A stretch of 63,204 bases of DNA, the filler included, from Octopus bimaculoides (taxonomy: Eukaryota), in NCBI RefSeq assembly GCF_001194135.2. It is 5 parts of 5 records of this genome, joined end to end, with 100 filler letters (N's around TTAATTAATTAA, not from the genome) between each part and the next. Parts side by side here need not be neighbours in the genome. Positions count along the whole stretch, not along the records: positions 30,831 to 52,991 come from NC_068995.1; 4 more parts are not named here. One strand, given 5' to 3'. Positions 24,329 through 52,940 of this stretch are shown here, piece by piece (within the stretch, counting starts at the first letter, position 1; each line of letters opens with the position of its first letter). A program made the translations under genes and the position numbers. Below the pieces are notes generated by a model. The model was not told where the DNA came from, ran no database searches, and saw only the letters and a list, made by a program, of their open reading frames with translations.

Positions 24329-24402
24329 CATACATACATACATACATACATACATACATACATACATACATACATACGTACATACATACATACATACATA
24401 CA
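24329..24402 (+). repeat. (CATA)n, about 18 units, directly 5' of an R4/Dong lineage-B element
   Basis: Direct reading. Confidence 0.95.
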
Positions 24403-30730: not shown

Positions 30731-30899
30731 NNNNNNNNNNNNNNNNNNNNNNNNNNNNNNNNNNNNNNNNNNNNTTAATTAATTAANNNNNNNNNNNNNN
30801 NNNNNNNNNNNNNNNNNNNNNNNNNNNNNNGAGGGATCAGGGATTGTGTCTTTGGTCATCCTTTGGTCTGTCTTTGGTCAACCGACCTGCGCTAAACAA

Positions 30900-31300
30900 C
30901 ATACAAATCTTTCTCGAATTAGATCTTATAGTGTACGATGGCAAAAAGAAGTGGCTGAAATGCAAGTCCTCAGACAAATTTCAGGAGTAACCTTACGAGA
31001 GAGGATGCAAAGAGGGCAGAGGTCAAAGAGTGTCACCTGGTGGAGCCGCGTTGAGAGGTCAAAGTTCTGGTGCATGTGATTAGACTGTCGTAGGAAATAA
31101 TCGCAAGAGAGATTCTGGGAGCCAAGCTAACCGGTAGAAAACGTAGGGTTAAACAAAAAACGACACGGTCGAATAGTGTCCATAATCTCAATTAATCACG
31201 CTTGGTAAATCAGCTGGAAAGTCTAATGGTAGTTACTTCTGATTAGACCTTATGGAAGAGGTACTTGAAGACTCTGCCACCACTACCGTCCTAGTAATTG
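30900..31300 (+). mobile_element. RTE-clade LINE, C-terminal ORF remnant
   Basis: AEMQVLRQISGVTLRERM...VERS..W, then frameshifted IAREILGAKLTGRK..KTRSNS, matching AEMRFLRRI.GVT..DR...R.QLRW.GH. Confidence 0.65.
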
Positions 31301-37181: not shown

Positions 37182-37221
37182 TTGTATGTATGTCTGTACG
37201 TATGTGCGTACATACATACAT

Positions 37222-37490
37222 ACATACACACATCAGTGGAACTGTCAAAATACGCAAAACTTTCCAAGAATCTAGCATTTATACACATGTCTTTAGATGC
37301 AAATATGTTTGAATAAACATGCATAAAACAAAACATGCAGAGACTCCAAATACCTACATTTATATACACGCATACATGCATAACTGTCCTGTTGATGTTG
37401 TTGAAATTCCACTCAAGGAGCCGTGGGCGTTGGTTAGAAGCTGACTCTTTCTCCATTGGCAAGAAATCTAGAAATAAAACTACATAATAA
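37222..37490 (+). mobile_element. 5'-truncated R4/Dong lineage-B 3' end following (CATA)n
   Basis: ISGTVKIRKTF matches the lineage-B C-terminus. The UTR aligns by eye with the reverse complement of 12880-13090. Confidence 0.75.
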
Positions 37491-37759
37491 CATATATATA
37501 AAATAAATAAAAAGCATGTCGTGTACAGAGATCGATATAATCAAGTATATCCTCCCTACAGCACATCTGTGGATTAACACTATTATTAAATATCGATACT
37601 GATATAATAAAATCGTATAAATTTAATTATTAGGATGTGATTTACAAATTACCAAAACACATATCGAGAAGAGTCATGTGTGGGACGAATAGAAATCAGG
37701 TTTCAAATCGAATAATCAGAAAAATCGATATATGTATGTATGTGTATCTATTAGTCTCT

Positions 37760-38065
37760 TGTAGGCATCTGTCGTCTCGAGAGACCATGGATCTGCGCCC
37801 GAAGAAATTGTGTCAGTTGCTGGTGATGGTGGTGCAGCGTCTGTTGTGGTTATAGAGGATCGCACACGGAAGTGGTAGTCACGCATAGAGCGACGGCATT
37901 TGAAGGAGCTCTCGGCCGGTGTTACTGTTTTTTTCCTTCTGTCCAGTGCGCTTTTCTTTGGTGGTGAGTTACTGTTTCTTTTCTCTTCCCCTCGCTTCAT
38001 CTTTTTTCGCAATATTTGTCTCCAGCGTGGGCGATCATTTGCGATTTCCTCCCATCTCAGGACGT

Positions 38066-38068
<3 letters not shown>
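37760..38068 (-). mobile_element. RTE-clade LINE 3' end
   Basis: WEEIANDRPRWRQILRK...EEKR...RRK...FKCRRSMRDYH followed by the tail gcagatccatggtctctcgagacgacagatgcctac. Confidence 0.8.
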
Positions 38069-38224: not shown

Positions 38225-38690
38225 ATACACGCACACACATGTATGTATGTATGTATGTATGTATGTATATATGTATGTATGTATGTGTGTGTGTATGTAT
38301 GTGTGTGTATGTATATGTGCGTGTATGTATGAATGTATGTATCTATGTATGTAGTATGTATGCATGCATACATGTATGTATGTGCGTATATATATATAGG
38401 AATGTTATATATGTATGCATGCATGTATGCATNNNNNNNNNNNNNNNNNNNNNNNNNNNNNNNNNNNNNNNNNNNNNNNNNNNNNNNNNNNNNNNNATAC
38501 ATGTATGTATGTGCGTATATATATAGGAATGTTATATATGTATGCATGCATGTATGCATGTTATGTATGTATGTGCTATGTCTGTTTGTATGCATGTATG
38601 TTATGTATGTGCGTATGTATGTAGGAATGTTATACATGTATGTATATATATGTATGTGTTTATGTATGTATGTATGCGTGTATGCGTATG

Positions 38691-38730: not shown

Positions 38731-39204
38731 TGTCTGGGGTTAGGTGCGTGCTGACTGAGTAGTCATGCAGCGGACGTTCCCTTCTGGTAAATACGAAGAT
38801 TTTCTAATCCCCTCCCAAAGTATAAACATGAGAGGTCATATTTCTTCCGTATCAAAACCAACCCTAATGTGATAGGAGAGGTGGTGGTGGGGAATGGGAA
38901 TAGGGGCAATTAAGCAGGGTTGTTTGACGAGCAAAAGTTCTCAGTTTAATATTACTAAGAACCTCTGCGTTATGTTATGCCGCTTATGCCCTTGAGAAAA
39001 AATATGAAAATCAAAGCCTTACGTCTGTACTGTGAGCAACTGTTACTAGAAAGGAGATCGATTGGAGCAAAAACAACATGTCCCGTGGGGCATTTAGTTG
39101 CTGCTATTTAAGTTCTGAGTTCGACTTGTTATAGGTCAGCACTCCATTTCACCGCATGGCATTCTACAAAATTCTCTCCATCATTTGCAACAAGTTTTCA
39201 ACAT

Positions 39205-39372
39205 ATATGACCGGCTTCTTTCAGTTTCCGTCTACCGAATCCACTCACAAGGCTTTGGTCGGCCTGAGGCTGTAGTAGAAGACACTTGTCCAAGGTGCCA
39301 CGCAGTGAGACTGAACCCAGAACCATGTGGTTGGGAAGCAAGCTTCTTACCACAAAGCCACGCCCGCGCCTA
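39205..39372 (-). mobile_element. SINE family A/B head (tRNA-like), near consensus
   Basis: Reverse complement ggcgcgggcgtggctttgtggtaagaagcttgcttcccaaccacatggttctgggttcagtctcactgc. Confidence 0.85.
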
Positions 39373-40879: not shown

Positions 40880-41965
40880 CATACATACATACATATATGT
40901 ATATATNNNNNNNNNNNNNNNNNNNNNNNNNNNNNNNNNNNNNNNNNNNNNNNNNNNNNNNNNNNNNNNNNNNNNNNNNNNNNNNNNNNNNNNNNNNNNN
41001 NNNNNNNNNNNNNNNNNNNNNNNNNNNNNNNNNNNNNNNNNNNNNNNNNNNNNNNNNNNNNNNNNNNNNNNNNNNNNNNNNNNNNNNNNNNNNNNNNNNN
41101 NNNNNNNNNNNNNTATTTTTCGTTACTGTTTTTTACTTTTTTTCTTTATCGTTTTATATATTTTCCCATTCTAATCAGAATTCCTCCCTTTTTACCGTTC
41201 GGTCAAAAGACCCCCATCTTTTTAACTTGTCTCATTCAGTCCTACATTCTTTCTGTTGACGCCACCAAATTGATCAATATTATCGATAAGGCGTCGAAAT
41301 TGTGGTGACTTTTGGTCAATAGCTGATGAGGAGTAGGCGTGACCACGTCCTTTGTGTGTGTGTTTTCTATTTTTCGTATGTTCCTCCGTCGTCCTCCCGT
41401 GACATATTTTACTACAAATAAAAGCTCAGAAAGAGTTATTGTTAGGCTTCACGGTGCTATGGGAGAAAGTACATGTCATCTAACTTGTAATATTACTAAA
41501 ATGTACAGAAACACAGTCTAACAGGAACGGTAACTAATTAAAAAGTGAATATATGAACAATGACGAGGTGTGTGCAGAACCAATCACGGAGAAAAGAGGA
41601 GAATGGGAGAAGCAAGAGAGAAAAAAGTGACAAAAGTGACTTCCTGTCACTACCGGAAGTTCATTTGAATATAGCTATGGCTTCTCACCATTGTTGCAAT
41701 GGCGAATAAATGATTTTTGAAATAAGTGTTCTCTCTCTTTCTCTCCCTCTCCCTCTCTTTCTTTCTCTCTCCCTCTCTCTCCCCCTCTCTCTCTCTCTCT
41801 CTCTCTCTCTTTTCTGTTCCTTTAGTGTTGGTGTGTATGTGTGTAAATATATATGTGTGTATATATGTGCATGTGCGTGCGTGTACGAGTGAGTGTCGAG
41901 CGGAGGATTGTCAACTGTAAGCATTTTTGGCGAGCCTTCACACTGACTACAGAATACAAACGGTT

Positions 41966-42170: not shown

Positions 42171-42987
42171 AAATTTACAACAGGGAAGTAAACAGATCTT
42201 CAACAAGAAACCAAAATAAAACAGCAGAAGACGTTTTAGCAGCACCAGAGGAATACAAGAAATCCGATTGTTTCACCAACTTTCAACATACGACACCGCA
42301 CAGCCACCACCATCACCTCCACTACAACACACACATACACACACACACACATACACACGCACACGCACACACATACATACCGGAGCGCGCACGCACACAT
42401 ACACACACACATATATATATATACATATATACAAACCTATATGGATACATATGTCTGTGTGTTTGTATGTACGTATGTTTCTGTTGTTAATCATTATGTA
42501 TGGATGGATGCATGCATGTATATTAAACATACATATATCTATGTATATATATATGTATATATATANNNNNNNNNNNNNNNNNNNNNNNNNNNNNNNNNNN
42601 NNNNNNNNNNNNNNNNNNNNNNNNNNNNNNNNNNNNNNNNNNNNNNNNNNNNNNNNNNNNNNNNNNNNNNNNNNNNNNNNNNNNNNNNNNNNNNNNNNNN
42701 NNNNNNNNNNNNNNNNNNNNNNNNNNNNNNNNNNNNNNNNNNNNNNNNNNNNNNNNNNNNNNNNNNNNNNNNNNNNNNNNNNNNNNNNNNNNNNNNNNNN
42801 NNNNNNNNNNNNNNNNNNNNNNNNNNNNNNNNNNNNNNNNNNNNNNNNNNNNNNNNNNNNNNNNNNNNNNNNNNNNNNNNNNNNNNNNNNNNNNNNNNNN
42901 NACATACATATCTACATCCATATTGGACGGTAATATTTAAGTCCATTATTCTCTTAGTGAAACCGTCTTCTGAAAGGTCAATATCAA

Positions 42988-42988
42988 C

Positions 42989-43065
<77 letters not shown>

Positions 43066-44137: not shown

Positions 44138-44385
44138 GGTGGCGAGCTGGAAAAATCGTTACTACGCCTGGCAAAATGATTAGCGGCATTTCGTTCTGAT
44201 TTCAAGTGCCACCGAGGTCCACTTTGCCTTGCAATCCTTTCGAGGCCAATAAAATAAGTACCAGTTGAATACTGGGTCGACTTGCTCCTTCCTAGATCGA
44301 ATTTGCGCTAGTGGACAGTTGAACAAATTTGCTTAAATGGACGGTTGATAAAATATTGCCGGCCTTGTGCCATAAACTAAATGGA
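44138..44385 (+). mobile_element. SINE family C (ggcgagctggcagaatcgttagcacg...ctttcatcctttcggggtcgataaa)
   Basis: Co-linear with 53556-53772. Carries 26-bp-unit repeats at 44293-44350. Confidence 0.8.
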
Positions 44386-44409: not shown

Positions 44410-44815
44410 ACAGGCGCAGACATGTCTATGTAATGAAGAAATTTGCTTCGTAATCCTGCCGTTTCGGTTTCAGTCCCACTGCCCAGTATCGTGGGGGATA
44501 GAGTCTTCTCAATTAGATCCACGCTGACCAATGCCTTGTGAGTGGATTTGGTAGATGGAAACTGTAAGAAGCTTATCATTCATGTGTGTGTGTGTGTATG
44601 TGTGTGTATTTGATGTGTTTGTCCTCGTACCGTTTGACAACCGGTATTGGTTTGGTTACGTACTCGCCACCTATTCGGTAAAGCAGATTGATAAAATAAG
44701 CACCAGAATTGAAATAAATACTGGCGTCGACTTGTTCGATTAACGCACAGCGCGGTGCTCCAGCACGGTCTGTAGTTGAAATGACTGAAACAAGTATAAA
44801 AAAAGATAAAAGCGA
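44410..44815 (+). mobile_element. SINE family A/B, complete but diverged, with internal (GT)n
   Basis: Head, GT tract at 44583-44620 and 3' module. Confidence 0.8.
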
Positions 44816-45400: not shown

Positions 45401-45564
45401 TATTATTATTATTGTGCTGGCTGAATCGAATAAAAACGGAGAAAATGCTAAACATTATTTCTTCGAGATAATAAAGTTCTTAGTTCGAATTTCAGCGCAG
45501 TAAAATTTGCGTTTCATCCTTTTGTTGAATTTGCTATACTGGGCAGACGATCACGTGCGTTCGA

Positions 45565-45745
45565 GTGGACAGTTGATCGAATTTGCGCTACTGGACAGTT
45601 GATCAAATTTGTCCGCTAGTGCAAATTCGATCAACTGTCCAATAGTACAAATAAGATCAACTGTCCACTAGCTCGAATTCTATCAATTGTCTACTAGCGT
45701 AAATTCGATCAACTGTCCATTAGCACAAATTCGATCAACTGTGCA
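45565..45745. repeat. 26-bp minisatellite with two units in one orientation and five in the other
   Basis: Unit gcaaattcgatcaactgtccactagc starts at 45621, 45647, 45673, 45699 and 45725. Reverse-complement units lie at 45565-45620. Confidence 0.9.
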
Positions 45746-48143: not shown

Positions 48144-48744
48144 NNNNNNNNNNNNNNNNNNNNNNNNNNNNNNNNNNNNNNNNNNNNNNNNNNNNNNNNN
48201 NNNNNNNNNNNNNNNNNNNNNNNNNNNNNNNNNNNNNNNNNNNNNNNNNNNNNNNNNNNNNNNNNNNNNNNNNNNNNNNNNNNNNNNNNNNNNNNNNNNN
48301 NNNNNNNNNNNNNNNNNNNNNNNNNNNNNNNNNNNNNNNNNNNNNNNNNNNNNNNNNNNNNNNNNNNNNNNNNNNNNNNNNNNNNNNNNNNNNNNNNNNN
48401 NNNNNNNNNNNNNNNNNNNNNNNNNNNNNNNNNNNNNNNNNNNNNNNNNNNNNNNNNNNNNNNNNNNNNNNNNNNNNNNNNNNNNNNNNNNNNNNNNNNN
48501 NNNNNNNNNNNNNNNNNNNNNNNNNNNNNNNNNNNNNNNNNNNNNNNNNNNNNNNNNNNNNNNNNNNNNNNNNNNNNNNNNNNNNNNNNNNNNNNNNNNN
48601 NNNNNNNNNNNNNNNNNGGCATTTTTATAGGCGCCTGCGCCCATAAAAATGCCCGACGTTTCTGATGGAGAGAGAGAGAGAGGGGGGGGAAAACGAGAGA
48701 GGAAATCACACATACACACACACGATCTCACGCACGCACGCACA

Positions 48745-48885
48745 TACAATGGGCTTCTTTCAGTTTCCGTCTACGAAATCCCCTCACAAGGCTTTCGGTT
48801 GGCTCTGAGCTATATAACAGACGACGCAGTGGGCTGAAACCTGAAGCTTGTGGTTGGGAAGCCAACTTCTTACCACTCAGCTATC
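48745..48885 (-). mobile_element. SINE family A/B head
   Basis: gggcttctttcagtttccgtctacgaaatccctcacaaggctttc...tggttgggaagccaacttcttaccac. Confidence 0.8.
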
Positions 48886-49535: not shown

Positions 49536-49932
49536 NNNNNNNNNNNNNNNNNNNNNNNNNNNNNNNNNNNNNNNNNNNNNNNNNNNNNNNNNNNNNNNNN
49601 NNNNNNNNNNNNNNNNNNNNNNNNNNNNNNNNNNNNNNNNNNNNNNNNNNNNNNNNNNNNNNNNNNNNNNNNNNNNNNNNNNNNNNNNNNNNNNNNNNNN
49701 NNNNNNNNNNNNNNNNNNNNNNNNNNNNNNNNNNNNNNNNNNNNNNNNNNNNNNNNNNNNNNNNNNNNNNNNNNNNNNNNNNNNNNNNNNNNNNNNNNNN
49801 NNNNNNNNTATATATATATATAAATATATATATAGAGAGAGAGAGAGAAATATACACGTGCTTAGGTGTGTGTACATGTGTGCATGTGTGTGAAAGTACA
49901 TGGACTACATACACAAACACACACACATACAT

Positions 49933-50384: not shown

Positions 50385-50771
50385 TCACACATCCACACAC
50401 GCGCACACGTACTTATCCTCGTATATTGTCATTTGATGTAACACTTAGTCATTAGACACACAATAAGTGGCTACAAACACATTTCTAATGTTTATCTCTC
50501 TCAGCATTTACGTGCAGACAGACAGACAGACAGACAGACACAACATACACACACGCATACACACACACACACACACACACACATACACACACATTCATAC
50601 ACATATACACACAAATACGCAAGTTATCACCACTCCAACTAACACCTCTATCATCATTATCATCATTTTAGTGGTGGCCATCGTGGTGGTGGTGGTCGTC
50701 GTCATCATCATCATCATCATCATCATCGTCTTCATGATCATCGTCGTCTTCGGCATCAGAAATAGCCCCTT

Positions 50772-50844
50772 TCGGGCATATGGCGTAATGGTTAAGAGCG
50801 CGGGCTACTAATCCCAAGATTCCGAGTTCGATTCCAGGCAGTGA

Positions 50845-50883
<39 letters not shown>

Positions 50884-50975: not shown

Positions 50976-51796
50976 TAAGTAATGTAANNNNNNNNNNNNN
51001 NNNNNNNNNNNNNNNNNNNNNNNNNNNNNNNNNNNNNNNNNNNNNNNNNNNNNNNNNNNNNNNNNNNNNNNNNNNNNNNNNNNNNNNNNNNNNNNNNNNN
51101 NNNNNNNNNNNNNNNNNNNNNNNNNNNNNNNNNNNNNNNNNNNNNNNNNNNNNNNNNNNNNNNNNNNNNNNNNNNNNNNNNNNNNNNNNNNNNNNNNNNN
51201 NNNNNNNNNNNNNNNNNNNNNNNNNNNNNNNNNNNNNNNNNNNNNNNNNNNNNNNNNNNNNNNNNNNNNNNNNNNNNNNNNNNNNNNNNNNNNNNNNNNN
51301 NNNNNNNNNNNNNNNNNNNNNNNNNNNNNNNNNNNNNNNNNNNNNNNNNNNNNNNNNNNNNNNNNNNNNNNNNNNNNNNNNNNNNNNNNNNNNNNNNNNN
51401 NNNNNNNNNNNNNNNNNNNNNNNNNNNNNNNNNNNNNNNNNNNNNNNNNNNNNNNNNNNNNNNNNNNNNNNNNNNNNNNNNNNNNNNNNNNNNNNNNNNN
51501 NNNNNNNNNNNNNNNNNNNNNNNNNNNNNNNNNNNATATATATATATAAACACGTGTGTGTGTTTATATTTCTATTCCCCACGTCTCTCATTTCGCTTCT
51601 CTCTCTCTTTAAAAAAAGATGGTTATTATATATTTTTAAAAGTAGATCACTTAAGTTAACTAATCAGCGGTTTCCGTGTCAAGAAATAAACACAAAAACC
51701 ACATGGCTGCGCGCGAAGCTCTTAGAATCCGGCTCCCCGGCCTCATATCTAGGAAGAATCTTGATAAATAAATAAAAATTGAAGGCATATATGCAT

Positions 51797-52495
51797 GTAT
51801 GTCTCTTCTATATTTTAATTATTATAAATCTTGCACCGAAAAGGGAGCCGGTTCCCAACAAAGATACAAGGCTCCATCTTGAGATGTAGTTAACACATTT
51901 GGAATTTGAGAAAAGTCTTGCATATTTTTATTGTCCCACTCACAGACTACACTTGTAATGTACGAATTAACCGGTCGATTTCTTTTTCTGAAAATCCCGG
52001 TTTATTCAGATTCTCCTTTAAGCATTTAGTACCAAAACCTAGTGCTCCAATAATCATTCGTGGCATTCCGTTGGTTATGACGACGAGGGTTCCAGTTGAT
52101 CTGATTGACGGAACTGCTTGTGAAATTAACGTGCAAGTGGCTGAGCACTCCATAGATACGTGGCCCTTTGAAATACAAGTACAACAGAAACAGGAAGAAA
52201 GAGTGAGAGATAGTTGTGATGAAAGAGTACAGCAGGGTTCGCAACCATCCCCTGCCGGAGCCTCGTGGAGCTATAGGTGTTTTCGCTCAAGAAACATTCA
52301 AAACGCCCGGTCTGGGAATCGAAACCACGATTCTACGACCGCGAGACCGCTGCTCTAACCACTGGGTCATTGCGCCTCCACAGTTATCATTGTTATGAAT
52401 ATAAATTTATAGTCTGGATATAGAAGCTGGAGGTTTCGAAGTAGTTGTCCATAGATATCCCCTTTTTCTTTGATTTTCAAAAAATATTTATATCT
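51797..52495 (-). mobile_element. 5'-truncated R4/Dong lineage-B 3' end (RLE tail and UTR) split by a SINE
   Basis: GDIYGQLLRNLQLLYPDYKFIFITMI | SINE | MIIGALGFGTKCLKENLNKPGFSEKEIDRLIRTLQV*SVSGTIKICKTF. Confidence 0.85.
52059..52383 (-). mobile_element. Mosaic SINE (family E head, family D tail) with a probable 8-bp TSD
   Basis: TSD-like taatcatt at 52051-52058 and ttatcatt at 52384-52391. Confidence 0.82.
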
Positions 52496-52540
52496 GCATG
52501 CATTCATGCATGCATGCATGTATGTATTTATGTATGTATG

Positions 52541-52708
52541 TTCTTTTATGTTTTTCATTATTTAAATTCTTCCTCTGAAGAAGGATCTGGTTTCTAACAA
52601 AGATACAAAGCTCCATCTTTGGAATGTAGATAAGGAAAGCAAGGTCTCGTTTTAAACCCGAGAAATGTCTTGCAAAGCTTTAGTGTTCCGCTTACAGGTT
52701 GCATTTCT
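52541..52708 (-). mobile_element. Very short R4/Dong lineage-B 3' end inside (CATA)n
   Basis: PVSGTLKLCKTFLGF plus the UTR hairpin. (ATGT)n lies on both sides on the plus strand. Confidence 0.72.
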
Positions 52709-52940
52709 ATGTATGTATGTATGTATGTTTGTTTCTATTTATGCGTGTCCGTGATGCAAGTAAACTTCGTAGATTATTAATCATTATGAGATAAACAAAG
52801 ATTATATAATCTCGAACAGGGATCTTGTTCGGTCGGTCATCTATACATGTCAGCCGGTTTAAAGCGAAGTCACGCAATAGAGATACAGTCATTAACATGC
52901 GGACTCACACCAACATACAAGCACAGGGACACACGCACAT

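What the first reader, a model, noticed from the sequence alone, without database searches (positions are those of the whole stretch)
51797..52725. An R4/Dong-clade retrotransposon lineage that appears to target (CATA)n microsatellites
Seen: six lineage-B copies (12876, 24403, 26530, 37222, 51797, 52541) are linked by shared RT motifs (NPLSFLL.KS.GY) or by the SGT.K.CKTF C-terminus and 3' UTR. Read on the coding strand, the 5' junctions at 24402, ~28020, ~37222 and ~52708 follow (CATA)n. The 3' ends at ~52541 and ~51797 run into catacata, and the 12876 end runs into (CA)n containing CATA. Polarity is consistent regardless of which genomic strand the copy is on. Established: R4/Dong elements use a restriction-like endonuclease and Dong targets (TAA)n; ACAY/AC-repeat targeting is known from APE-type R1-clade Waldo/Mino elements. 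Inference: this is a sequence-specific RLE lineage with a different microsatellite target, convergent with those R1 elements. I am not aware of a description, but could not search.
Basis: partly seen in the sequence, partly recalled or inferred. Interest (0 to 1): 0.75.

Follow-up and report, generated by a model that had tools for sequence, protein, structure and literature searches.

The report
Retrotransposon tail fragments embedded in CATA microsatellites
Three short, 5'-truncated end-pieces of one retrotransposon family sit in a fixed orientation inside (CATA)n-type microsatellites, which fits a repeat-targeting element of a kind already known for other repeats, but this piece cannot prove the targeting or the family assignment.

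Summary
The sequence observation holds inside this piece. Two clear 3'-terminal fragments (c1, c2; 74% identical) and one weaker one (c3) belong to one family. On the coding strand, each follows a CATA-type tract. All three 5' flanks are CATA or CATG repeats. The 3' ends of c1 and c2 run into ACATACAT.

New points:
- c1 is longer than reported. A tRNA-derived SINE splits it, and its 5' end abuts c2's tail, so c2 and c1 form a head-to-tail pair.
- An Octopus vulgaris transcript holds two more family members in the same head-to-tail layout.

(ACAT)n is the commonest microsatellite here. Even so, the junction association beats background: empirical Fisher p is 5e-6 for six junctions and 4e-4 for the two independent 5' junctions.

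Two things are not shown. No empty site could be examined, so tails made by the element itself plus reverse-transcriptase template jumps remain a live rival. An unrelated LINE fragment in the piece also ends in (ACAT)3. The R4/Dong assignment is also untested, because the piece holds only about 95 degenerate C-terminal codons and no search gave a significant match.

Microsatellite-specific LINEs that encode a restriction-like endonuclease (RLE) are already known, so this would be a new member of a known kind. Interest is modest.

The parts
52708..52728 (-). 5' flank of c2: perfect (CATA)5 on the coding strand
   Evidence: 16/16 match to the CATA period, empirical p 0.0037.
52541..52707 (-). 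c2: 167-bp 5'-truncated 3' end of the family. It holds the last ~37 codons (..EMQPVSGTLKLCKTFLGFKTRPCFPYLHSKDGALYLC*) plus the 3' UTR.
   Evidence: Also homologous to octopus transcript comp2742, 69% and 80% identity, E 5e-19 and 2e-10.
52583..52614 (-). c2 3' UTR stem-loop (GGAGCT..AGATCC), counterpart of the c1 stem
   Evidence: RNAalifold predicts a 6-bp outer stem kept in c1, c2 and c3b, with one compensatory C-G to U-A change. With only three sequences this is weak evidence.
52494..52540 (-). Tail of c2, which is also the 5' flank of c1: CATACATACATAAATACATACAT then (GCAT)n
   Evidence: c2 3' junction p 0.0086; c1 5' junction (CATG variant) p 0.094.
52382..52493 (-). c1, 5' part: codons ..YKYFLKIKEKGDIYGQLLRNLQLLYPDYKFIFITMIT
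   Evidence: The frame continues across the SINE into ITNGMPRMIIGALG... once the SINE and one copy of its target duplication are removed.
52079..52381 (-). tRNA-derived SINE inserted into c1. Its 6-bp target duplication is ATAACT (52382-52387) and ATAACC (52073-52078).
   Evidence: It is a later event and not part of the family. ARAGORN calls no tRNA. The SINE identification is from reading the sequence.
51803..52078 (-). c1, 3' part: ..ITNGMPRMIIGALGFGTKCLKENLNKPGFSEKEIDRLIRTLQV*SVSGTIKICKTFL.. plus the 3' UTR, with one in-frame stop and a frameshift
   Evidence: 63% identical to comp2742 over 308 bp, E 1e-15.
51844..51875 (-). c1 3' UTR stem-loop (GGAGCC..GGCTCC)
51786..51802 (-). Tail of c1: ACATACATGCATATATG
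   Evidence: 14/16 match, p 0.0175.
37209..37233 (+). 5' flank of c3: (TACA)5 CACA. It is preceded by (TA)13 and a TATG-type tract, so it forms a compound microsatellite.
   Evidence: 15/16 match, p 0.0086.
37234..37336 (+). c3a: a diverged fragment (..SGTVKIRKTFQES..). It may end at GCAGAGAC like the other copies.
   Evidence: nhmmer E 0.42 alone, but collinear with c3b. Weak.
37337..37396 (+). Degenerate CATA-like tract between c3a and c3b (..ATATACACGCATACATGCATAAC..). Alternatively it is a lineage-specific insert in one 3' UTR.
Evidence: 13/16 match.
37397..37489 (+). c3b: 3' UTR block homologous to c1 and c2, including the stem-loop. It ends ..ATAATAAC.
   Evidence: nhmmer E 0.0016 to 0.003; alignments A3 and A4.
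37490..37512 (+). Tail of c3b: ATATATATAAAATAAATAAAAAG, which is A/T-rich and not CATA
   Evidence: p 0.14.

Best explanation
These are dead, 5'-truncated 3' ends of one non-LTR retrotransposon family that integrates by target-primed reverse transcription into (CATA)n-type microsatellites in one orientation.

Proposed mechanism:
1. The element RNA ends in ..AAC/GAC followed by one or more CAUA-like units, just downstream of a short 3' UTR stem-loop.
2. The element's protein nicks the TATG strand of a CATA tract, or is recruited to it. The RNA's terminal repeat units pair with the nicked strand and prime cDNA synthesis.
3. The 5' end of the usually incomplete cDNA is joined upstream, where internal TACAT-like sequence finds microhomology with the upstream CATA units.
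4. The copy therefore ends up flanked by the repeat on both sides. The tail of a resident copy is itself a target, which gives head-to-tail stacks of unrelated age.

Shown: the homology, the orientation, the repeat flanks, the stacking, and the presence of the family in an octopus transcript.

Inferred: the priming and pairing steps, that the repeat existed before insertion, and that the enzyme is a restriction-like endonuclease of the R4/Dong type.
For: - c1 and c2 are homologous. c3 is weakly homologous.
- All three 5' junctions follow CATA or CATG repeats on the coding strand, although the copies are truncated at different points.
- Empirical junction test against this repeat-rich piece: Fisher p 4.7e-6 for all six junctions, and 3.6e-4 for the two independent 5' junctions.
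- c3's upstream (TACA)5 is part of an ordinary compound microsatellite, (TA)13 plus a TATG-type tract. It does not follow any recognisable element end.
- The stacked neighbours differ by 26% and only c1 carries a SINE insertion. That fits separate insertions into an existing CATA tract better than one event.
- The same head-to-tail layout across a CATA-like tract occurs in O. vulgaris transcript comp2742.
- Five 3' termini align to ..AAC/GAC followed by ATACAT, ATATAT or GTATAC.
- The c2 and OV-2 truncation points lie at internal TACAT motifs.
- Literature: RLE-type LINE clades are mostly target-specific, with microsatellites among the targets (PMC4640811; PMC7998251).
Against: - There are only five or six copies, and two of the three stacked pairs are not independent events.
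- No empty site was seen, so a pre-existing CATA tract is inferred rather than shown.
- An unrelated LINE fragment (37744-38067, minus strand) also ends in (ACAT)3. CATA tails may therefore be made by several element families in this genome.
- Beyond the first 6-8 bases the 3' flanks are heterogeneous: CATG, TA-rich, and (TAGA)n.
- Both clean 5' flanks are exactly five perfect units, which could mean they were copied from a template rather than being old genomic repeats.
- The RLE/R4-Dong class is unsupported by any search.
Confidence: 0.5

Rival explanations
1. The CATA repeats are made by the element and are not its target. The RNA carries a (CAUA)n tail, as CR1/L2-type LINEs carry short repeat tails. 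The reverse transcriptase jumps from the 5' end of one template to the 3' tail of another. That produces head-to-tail partial copies. When the jump aborts after the tail, it leaves a 5' block of CATA units. Insertion sites themselves would then be unrelated to CATA.
For: - Every copy has CATA-like bases directly after the same ..AAC/GAC terminus.
- Both clean 5' flanks are perfect and of the same length, five units.
- All three loci show head-to-tail stacking.
- An unrelated LINE fragment also ends in (ACAT)3, while its 5' flank is (CT)19.
- Template jumping by R2 reverse transcriptase is established biochemistry (my knowledge; not checked here).
Against: - Stacked neighbours are 26% diverged and differ in later insertions. 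One-event co-integration does not predict this.
- c3's 5' CATA block continues a compound (TA)n/(TATG)n microsatellite.
- (ACAT)n tracts are far more numerous than family copies: 34 tracts against 3 copies in the piece. Plenty of pre-existing targets are therefore available.
Confidence: 0.27
2. The association is passive. The family inserts without sequence preference, and copies survive or accumulate in microsatellite-rich, gene-poor DNA. Alternatively, CATA arrays grow by slippage out of the element's A/T-rich ends.
For: - The piece is extremely rich in simple repeats, and (ACAT)n is the top class.
- CATACATA and TATGTATG are also about 8-fold over-represented in 400 kb of octopus transcripts.
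- Passive accumulation near CA repeats has been proposed for Drosophila Waldo-A and Waldo-B (PMC3812793).
Against: - The junctions are exact, with the repeat abutting the point where homology ends.
- Polarity is fixed.
- The empirical p-values already use this piece's own repeat density as background.
- Slippage cannot create a repeat upstream of differently truncated 5' ends.
Confidence: 0.1
3. The fragments belong to another kind of retroelement. One option is a Penelope-like element, whose copies typically form partial head-to-tail tandems. Another is a short non-autonomous element that begins with (CATA)5 and borrows a LINE tail.
For: - Head-to-tail partial copies occur at three loci.
- c2 and c3 start within about 20 bp of the same internal position, each after five CATA units.
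- No positive evidence for an RLE or RT domain was found.
Against: - c1 and octopus copy OV-1 extend much further 5' through open-reading-frame remnants. These carry a K..(K/I)Y..L ... IIGALG ... pattern like the end of R2's RLE domain, EKVRKYKHL...PLGARG. The short copies are therefore truncations of a longer coding element.
- Rfam found no hammerhead ribozyme or other family at E up to 1 in these regions.
Confidence: 0.08

Closest known systems
Dong (R4 clade, restriction-like endonuclease LINE; Bombyx, Anopheles, Biomphalaria, ostracods)
   Same: Inserts in one orientation into a microsatellite and is flanked by it on both sides. It has no poly(A) tail; the tail is made of target repeat units. 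The endonuclease region is C-terminal. Dong-R4 elements are abundant in octopus genomes (PMC7998251; PMC13282606; PMC9115989).
   Different: [quoted passage not shown] Membership of the clade could not be tested, because the piece has no RT and the RLE remnant is not significant.
Waldo (R1 clade, AP-endonuclease LINE; Anopheles, earwig)
   Same: Its target is (ACAY)n, which includes ACAT and so is the same repeat class (PMC3812793).
   Different: Waldo has an AP-type endonuclease at the N-terminus and is known from insects. The fragments here end in an ORF tail that looks RLE-like. If that holds, the resemblance is convergent.
Togen (NeSL-related RLE LINEs of fish) and microsatellite-specific HERO families
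   Same: They are RLE-type LINEs specific for a simple repeat, (TG)n for Togen. They show that target switches between microsatellites are common in RLE clades (PMC4640811).
   Different: Different repeat, different clades, different hosts.
CR1/L2-type LINEs with short repeat tails (such as the unrelated LINE fragment at 37744-38067 in this piece)
   Same: The 3' end is followed by a few tetranucleotide units, (ACAT)3.
   Different: In that fragment the repeat is only at the 3' end, and the 5' flank is (CT)19. The family studied here has the repeat on both sides.

Membership tests
[quoted passage not shown] | Reverse transcriptase that groups with R4/Dong in an RT phylogeny | not testable with these tools
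   The piece contains no RT sequence: all non-repetitive stop-to-stop ORFs of 55 aa or more were listed and none looks like RT. The protein searches that might have retrieved a full-length relative found nothing.
[quoted passage not shown] | C-terminal restriction-like endonuclease (CCHC motif plus PD..(D/E)xK) | tested here: inconclusive
   Only the last ~95 codons survive in c1. The pattern KEKGDIYGQLL ... IIGALGFG ... GFSEKE resembles R2's EKVRKYKHL ... PLGARGKW ... LGLSK. However, Pfam and the PDB give no hit, and an HMM of two R2 RLE segments does not score c1 or OV-1 above 2000 shuffles.
[quoted passage not shown] | [quoted passage not shown] | not testable with these tools
   All copies are 5'-truncated.
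Microsatellite-specific LINEs (Dong, Waldo, Mino, Kibi, Koshi, Togen) | Copies flanked on both sides by the same repeat, in fixed orientation relative to the element | tested here: met
   c2 has (CATA)5 upstream and (CATA)n(CATG)n downstream. c1 has CATG/CATA upstream and ACATACATGCATATATG downstream. c3 has (TACA)5 upstream. All are on the coding strand. Fisher p 4.7e-6 against the piece's own background. The sample is small.
Microsatellite-specific LINEs (Dong, Waldo, Mino, Kibi, Koshi, Togen) | The repeat is present at the empty (pre-insertion) site | not testable with these tools
No other collection held this genome.
Microsatellite-specific LINEs (Dong, Waldo, Mino, Kibi, Koshi, Togen) | The specificity holds across many independent copies | tested here: inconclusive
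   Five or six copies at three loci. The 3' flanks beyond 6-8 bases vary: CATA/CATG, TA-rich, (TAGA)n.
Penelope-like elements | Partial head-to-tail tandems with hammerhead ribozyme motifs, and a GIY-YIG endonuclease | tested here: not met
   Head-to-tail stacking is present. No hammerhead or other Rfam family was found at E up to 1 in these regions. The ORF tail has no GIY-YIG hit in Pfam. The stacked copies are separated by microsatellite and are 26% diverged.
R1-clade Waldo | AP-type endonuclease and an R1-clade RT | not testable with these tools
   The piece has no 5' or RT sequence.

The most novel reading that the evidence does not exclude
An R4/Dong-clade lineage of cephalopods has switched its target from the ancestral (TAA)n to (CATA)n. 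This would be a second, independent origin of ACAY-class microsatellite targeting, after the AP-endonuclease Waldo elements. The lineage's own tails and stacked copies would then help explain why (ACAT)n is so abundant in these genomes.
Probability: 0.3. Interest if true: 0.45.

Novelty: new member of a known kind. Interest (0 to 1): 0.3.

Why it matters
If confirmed, it adds one more microsatellite target to the repertoire of repeat-specific LINEs and gives a natural pair of related lineages, (TAA)n Dong against a (CATA)n lineage, for asking which protein module sets the target. It may also link a LINE family to the high (ACAT)n content of cephalopod genomes. It does not change how such elements are understood, because target switches among RLE-type LINEs are already well documented.

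Tried and rejected

**Protein searches that found nothing useful**
- The word-indexed collection returned nothing in three searches: the c1 peptide, a c1+c2 composite, and a 675-aa composite of SINE frames, other LINE fragments and extended c1.
- The exhaustive HMMER search of 1.84 billion representatives with the 43-aa c1 peptide gave one spurious bacterial repeat protein.
- Exact look-up of ten window ORFs found none of them in the collection.
- The PDB and Pfam gave no relevant hit for the c1 peptides.

**DNA pattern scans**
- Scans for the family's 22-mer and for SINE motifs covered the metagenome, viral and prokaryote-genome collections. They returned nothing, or only tRNA-like chance hits.

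**RNA searches**
- Rfam at E up to 1 gave only sub-threshold miRNA-like hits caused by microsatellites.
- ARAGORN found no tRNA.

**Organism**
- I suspected an octopod from memory of its SINEs, but SINE k-mers were absent from the 400 kb of O. vulgaris transcripts held as a supplement.
- The family itself was found there once, in comp2742. An octopod origin is therefore likely, but the species is not established.

**RLE homology**
- I tested c1 and OV-1 against an HMM of R2 segments. They scored no better than shuffles.

**Considered and set aside**
- A fourth copy upstream of c2 (52728-52900): no homology at E up to 10.
- Homology continuing beyond the tails: none.

Full report
**Scope and limits.** Only places 30831-52991 of the window are genome. 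The RT motifs and the other three copies could not be examined. None of the protein or DNA collections on hand turned out to hold this genome.

**Anatomy.**
- On the minus strand, c2 runs from 52707 to 52541. It holds the last ~37 codons (..VSGTLKLCKTFLGFKTRPCFPYLHSKDGALYLC*) and a short 3' UTR.
- c2 is preceded on its coding strand by a perfect (CATA)5 (52728-52708). It is followed by CATACATACATAAATACATACAT and then (GCAT)n (52540-52494).
Its 3' part runs from 52078 to 51803. Upstream lies a 303-bp tRNA-derived SINE (52381-52079), bracketed by ATAACT/ATAACC. Beyond that the same reading frame continues to about 52493.
- With the SINE removed, c1 reads ..YKYFLKIKEKGDIYGQLLRNLQLLYPDYKFIFITMITNGMPRMIIGALGFGTKCLKENLNKPGFSEKEIDRLIRTLQV*SVSGTIKICKTFL.
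- c1's 5' end therefore abuts c2's tail, so the two form a head-to-tail pair. c1 ends at 51803 and is followed by ACATACATGCATATATG.
- c1 and c2 are 69-74% identical over their shared 150-185 bp.
- The plus-strand copy c3 starts at about 37234, directly after (TACA)5. That tract itself continues a compound (TA)13/TATG-type microsatellite.
- c3 matches a c1+c2 profile only in two collinear blocks: 37234-37266 (E 0.42) and 37405-37484 (E 0.0016). Either it carries ~100 extra bases in its 3' UTR, or it is again two stacked fragments separated by a degenerate CATA-like tract. Its end at about 37489 is followed by an A/T-rich tract, not by CATA.
- A 3' UTR stem-loop (GGAGCC..GGCTCC in c1) is kept in c1, c2 and c3b, with one compensatory change. 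With three sequences that is only a hint.

**Is it more than chance?**
- The piece is saturated with simple repeats. (ACAT)n is the commonest class, with 19 perfect runs of three or more units in 19.6 kb.
- I scored the 16 bases at each junction for their best match to the CATA period. I allowed +-3 bp of slack in the junction and compared with every position on both strands of the piece.

| Junction | Empirical p |
|---|---|
| c2 5' | 0.0037 |
| c2 3' | 0.0086 |
| c3 5' | 0.0086 |
| c1 3' | 0.0175 |
| c1 5' (CATG variant) | 0.094 |
| c3b 3' | 0.14 |

- Fisher's combination gives 4.7e-6 for all six junctions, and 3.6e-4 for the two 5' junctions that are certainly independent.
- The association and its polarity are therefore real in this piece, even though the sample is tiny.

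**A second genome.**
- A 13-mer from c1 hit one transcript, comp2742_c0_seq1 (1160 nt), in the part of the Octopus vulgaris transcriptome held as a supplement of PMC9115989.
- The authors' own mapping places this transcript unspliced on scaffold KQ430777.
- It carries a long degenerate family member, OV-1. OV-1 is 63% identical to c1 over 308 bp (E 1e-15) and 69% identical to c2 (E 5e-19).
- OV-1 is followed by ATATATACATCTCTACATACAT and then by a second, 5'-truncated member, OV-2, which is 80% identical to c2 (E 2e-10). OV-2 ends in GTATACAT TAGC (TAGA)n.
- The family therefore exists in octopods, and the head-to-tail stacking across a CATA-like tract recurs there.
- Aligning five 3' ends shows a common terminus..AAC or ..GAC, followed at once by ATACAT, ATACAT, ATATAT, ATATAT or GTATAC. 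Beyond those bases the flanks differ: CATA/CATG arrays, TA-rich sequence, and (TAGA)n.
- c2 and OV-2 are truncated at internal TACAT motifs. This is what microhomology with an upstream CATA tract would give.

**What kind of element?**
- The ORF remnant upstream of the stop has the pattern K..(K/I)Y..L, then a hydrophobic stretch, IIGALG, and ..G(F/L)S.KE... OV-1 has the more canonical EKYEYL.
- To get real text for comparison, I ran a consensus of restriction-like endonuclease (RLE) domains, written from memory, against the PDB. It found R2 proteins (E 2e-21). Their sequence in that region reads EKVRKYKHLETEVRHLTNAKDVTFVGFPLGARGKWHQDNFKLLTELGLSK. The order of motifs is the same.
- The resemblance is not statistically supported. 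Pfam and PDB searches with the c1 peptides found nothing relevant. An HMM built from two R2 RLE segments does not score c1 or OV-1 above 2000 shuffles.
- No RT sequence is present in the piece.
Here it is a plausible but untested label.
- A Penelope-like element, which also forms partial tandems, is unlikely. No hammerhead motif was found, there was no GIY-YIG hit, and the stacked copies are 26% diverged and separated by microsatellite.

**Mechanism and rivals.**
- Best reading (confidence about 0.5): a LINE whose RNA ends in CAUA-like units integrates by target-primed reverse transcription into CATA-type tracts in one orientation. The tails of resident copies serve as further targets.
- For this reading: repeats upstream of differently truncated copies; c3's upstream repeat being part of an ordinary compound microsatellite; and the divergence and different insertion histories of stacked neighbours.
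- Main rival (about 0.27): the repeats are made by the element. A CAUA tail plus template jumping by the reverse transcriptase would produce the tails, the stacks, and even a 5' block of tail units.
- For the rival: both clean 5' blocks are perfect and exactly five units long. An unrelated LINE fragment in the piece (37744-38067, minus strand; C-terminal ..WEEIANDRPRWR..) also ends in (ACAT)3, while its 5' flank is (CT)19.
- Only empty sites can decide between the two.
- Passive accumulation in repeat-rich DNA (about 0.1) does not explain exact junctions and fixed polarity.

**What is known.**
- RLE-type LINE clades are 'mostly target-specific'. (TG)n-specific Togen and some microsatellite-specific HERO families are described (PMC4640811).
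- (ACAY)n is the target of the AP-endonuclease Waldo elements (PMC3812793).
- Dong-R4 LINEs are abundant and recently active in Octopus vulgaris, and a full-length Dong consensus exists for O. bimaculoides (PMC13282606; PMC9115989).
- My literature searches found no description of a CATA-targeting R4/Dong lineage. Repbase and Dfam could not be consulted, and octopus repeat libraries may already contain this family.

**Verdict.**
Association with CATA-type repeats in fixed polarity holds. Endonuclease-level target specificity and R4/Dong membership are not shown.
- If true, it is a new member of a well-known kind of element. Interest is modest.

Noticed in passing
window 52073-52387: A 303-bp tRNA-derived SINE (minus strand, head GTGGAGGCGCAATGACCCAGTGGTTAGAGC..) is inserted into c1 with a 6-bp target duplication, ATAACT/ATAACC. 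ARAGORN does not call it as a tRNA.
   Followed up: partly
window 37744-38067 (minus strand), tail 37731-37743: This is the C-terminal fragment of an unrelated LINE (..DVLRWEEIANDRPRWRQIL.. then a degenerate F.C..C..R motif). Its 3' end is followed by (ACAT)3 and its 5' truncation point abuts (CT)19. CATA-type tails are therefore not unique to the family under study.
   Followed up: partly
window 50760-50880: A tRNA-like SINE 3' end (..GGTTAAGAGCGCGGGCTACTAATCCCAAGATTCCGAGTTCGATTCCAGGCAGTGACCTG) runs into (AAT)11, the repeat class that canonical Dong elements use. A second long (AAT)25 lies at 42989-43062.
   Followed up: no
window 39201-39371, 44412-44585, 48752-48876: Three copies of another SINE-like repeat (70-76% identical). 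Each is adjacent to AC/TG or ACAT-type microsatellite.
   Followed up: no
window 30831-31076: At the left edge of the piece an ORF remnant (..VAEMQVLRQISGVTLRERMQ..) looks like the C-terminal region of yet another LINE. It is cut by the edge of the piece.
   Followed up: no
window 45610-45742: A tandem array of a 26-bp unit (5 copies, 78% matches). Related single units lie at 44295-44359 and 45564-45611.
   Followed up: no
window 38433-38486, 40907-41108, 42566-42900, 48144-48640, 49536-49808, 50989-51535 (approximate N runs): Nearly every assembly gap in the piece is bordered by microsatellite, so repeat tracts are probably under-represented or collapsed in this assembly. This also limits any count of junction repeats.
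   Followed up: no
Octopus vulgaris transcriptome sample (PMC9115989, Additional file 2, first 400 kb): CATACATA occurs 45 times and TATGTATG 55 times, about 8-fold over random expectation. (ACAT)n is therefore also common in octopus transcripts. k-mers of the two SINEs seen in the window were not found there.
   Followed up: partly
window 30831-52991: At a relaxed threshold Rfam reports 136 sub-gathering 'miRNA' matches (mir-297, mir-3149, mir-466 and others). All lie on AT/AC/ACAT microsatellites and are artefacts.
   Followed up: yes
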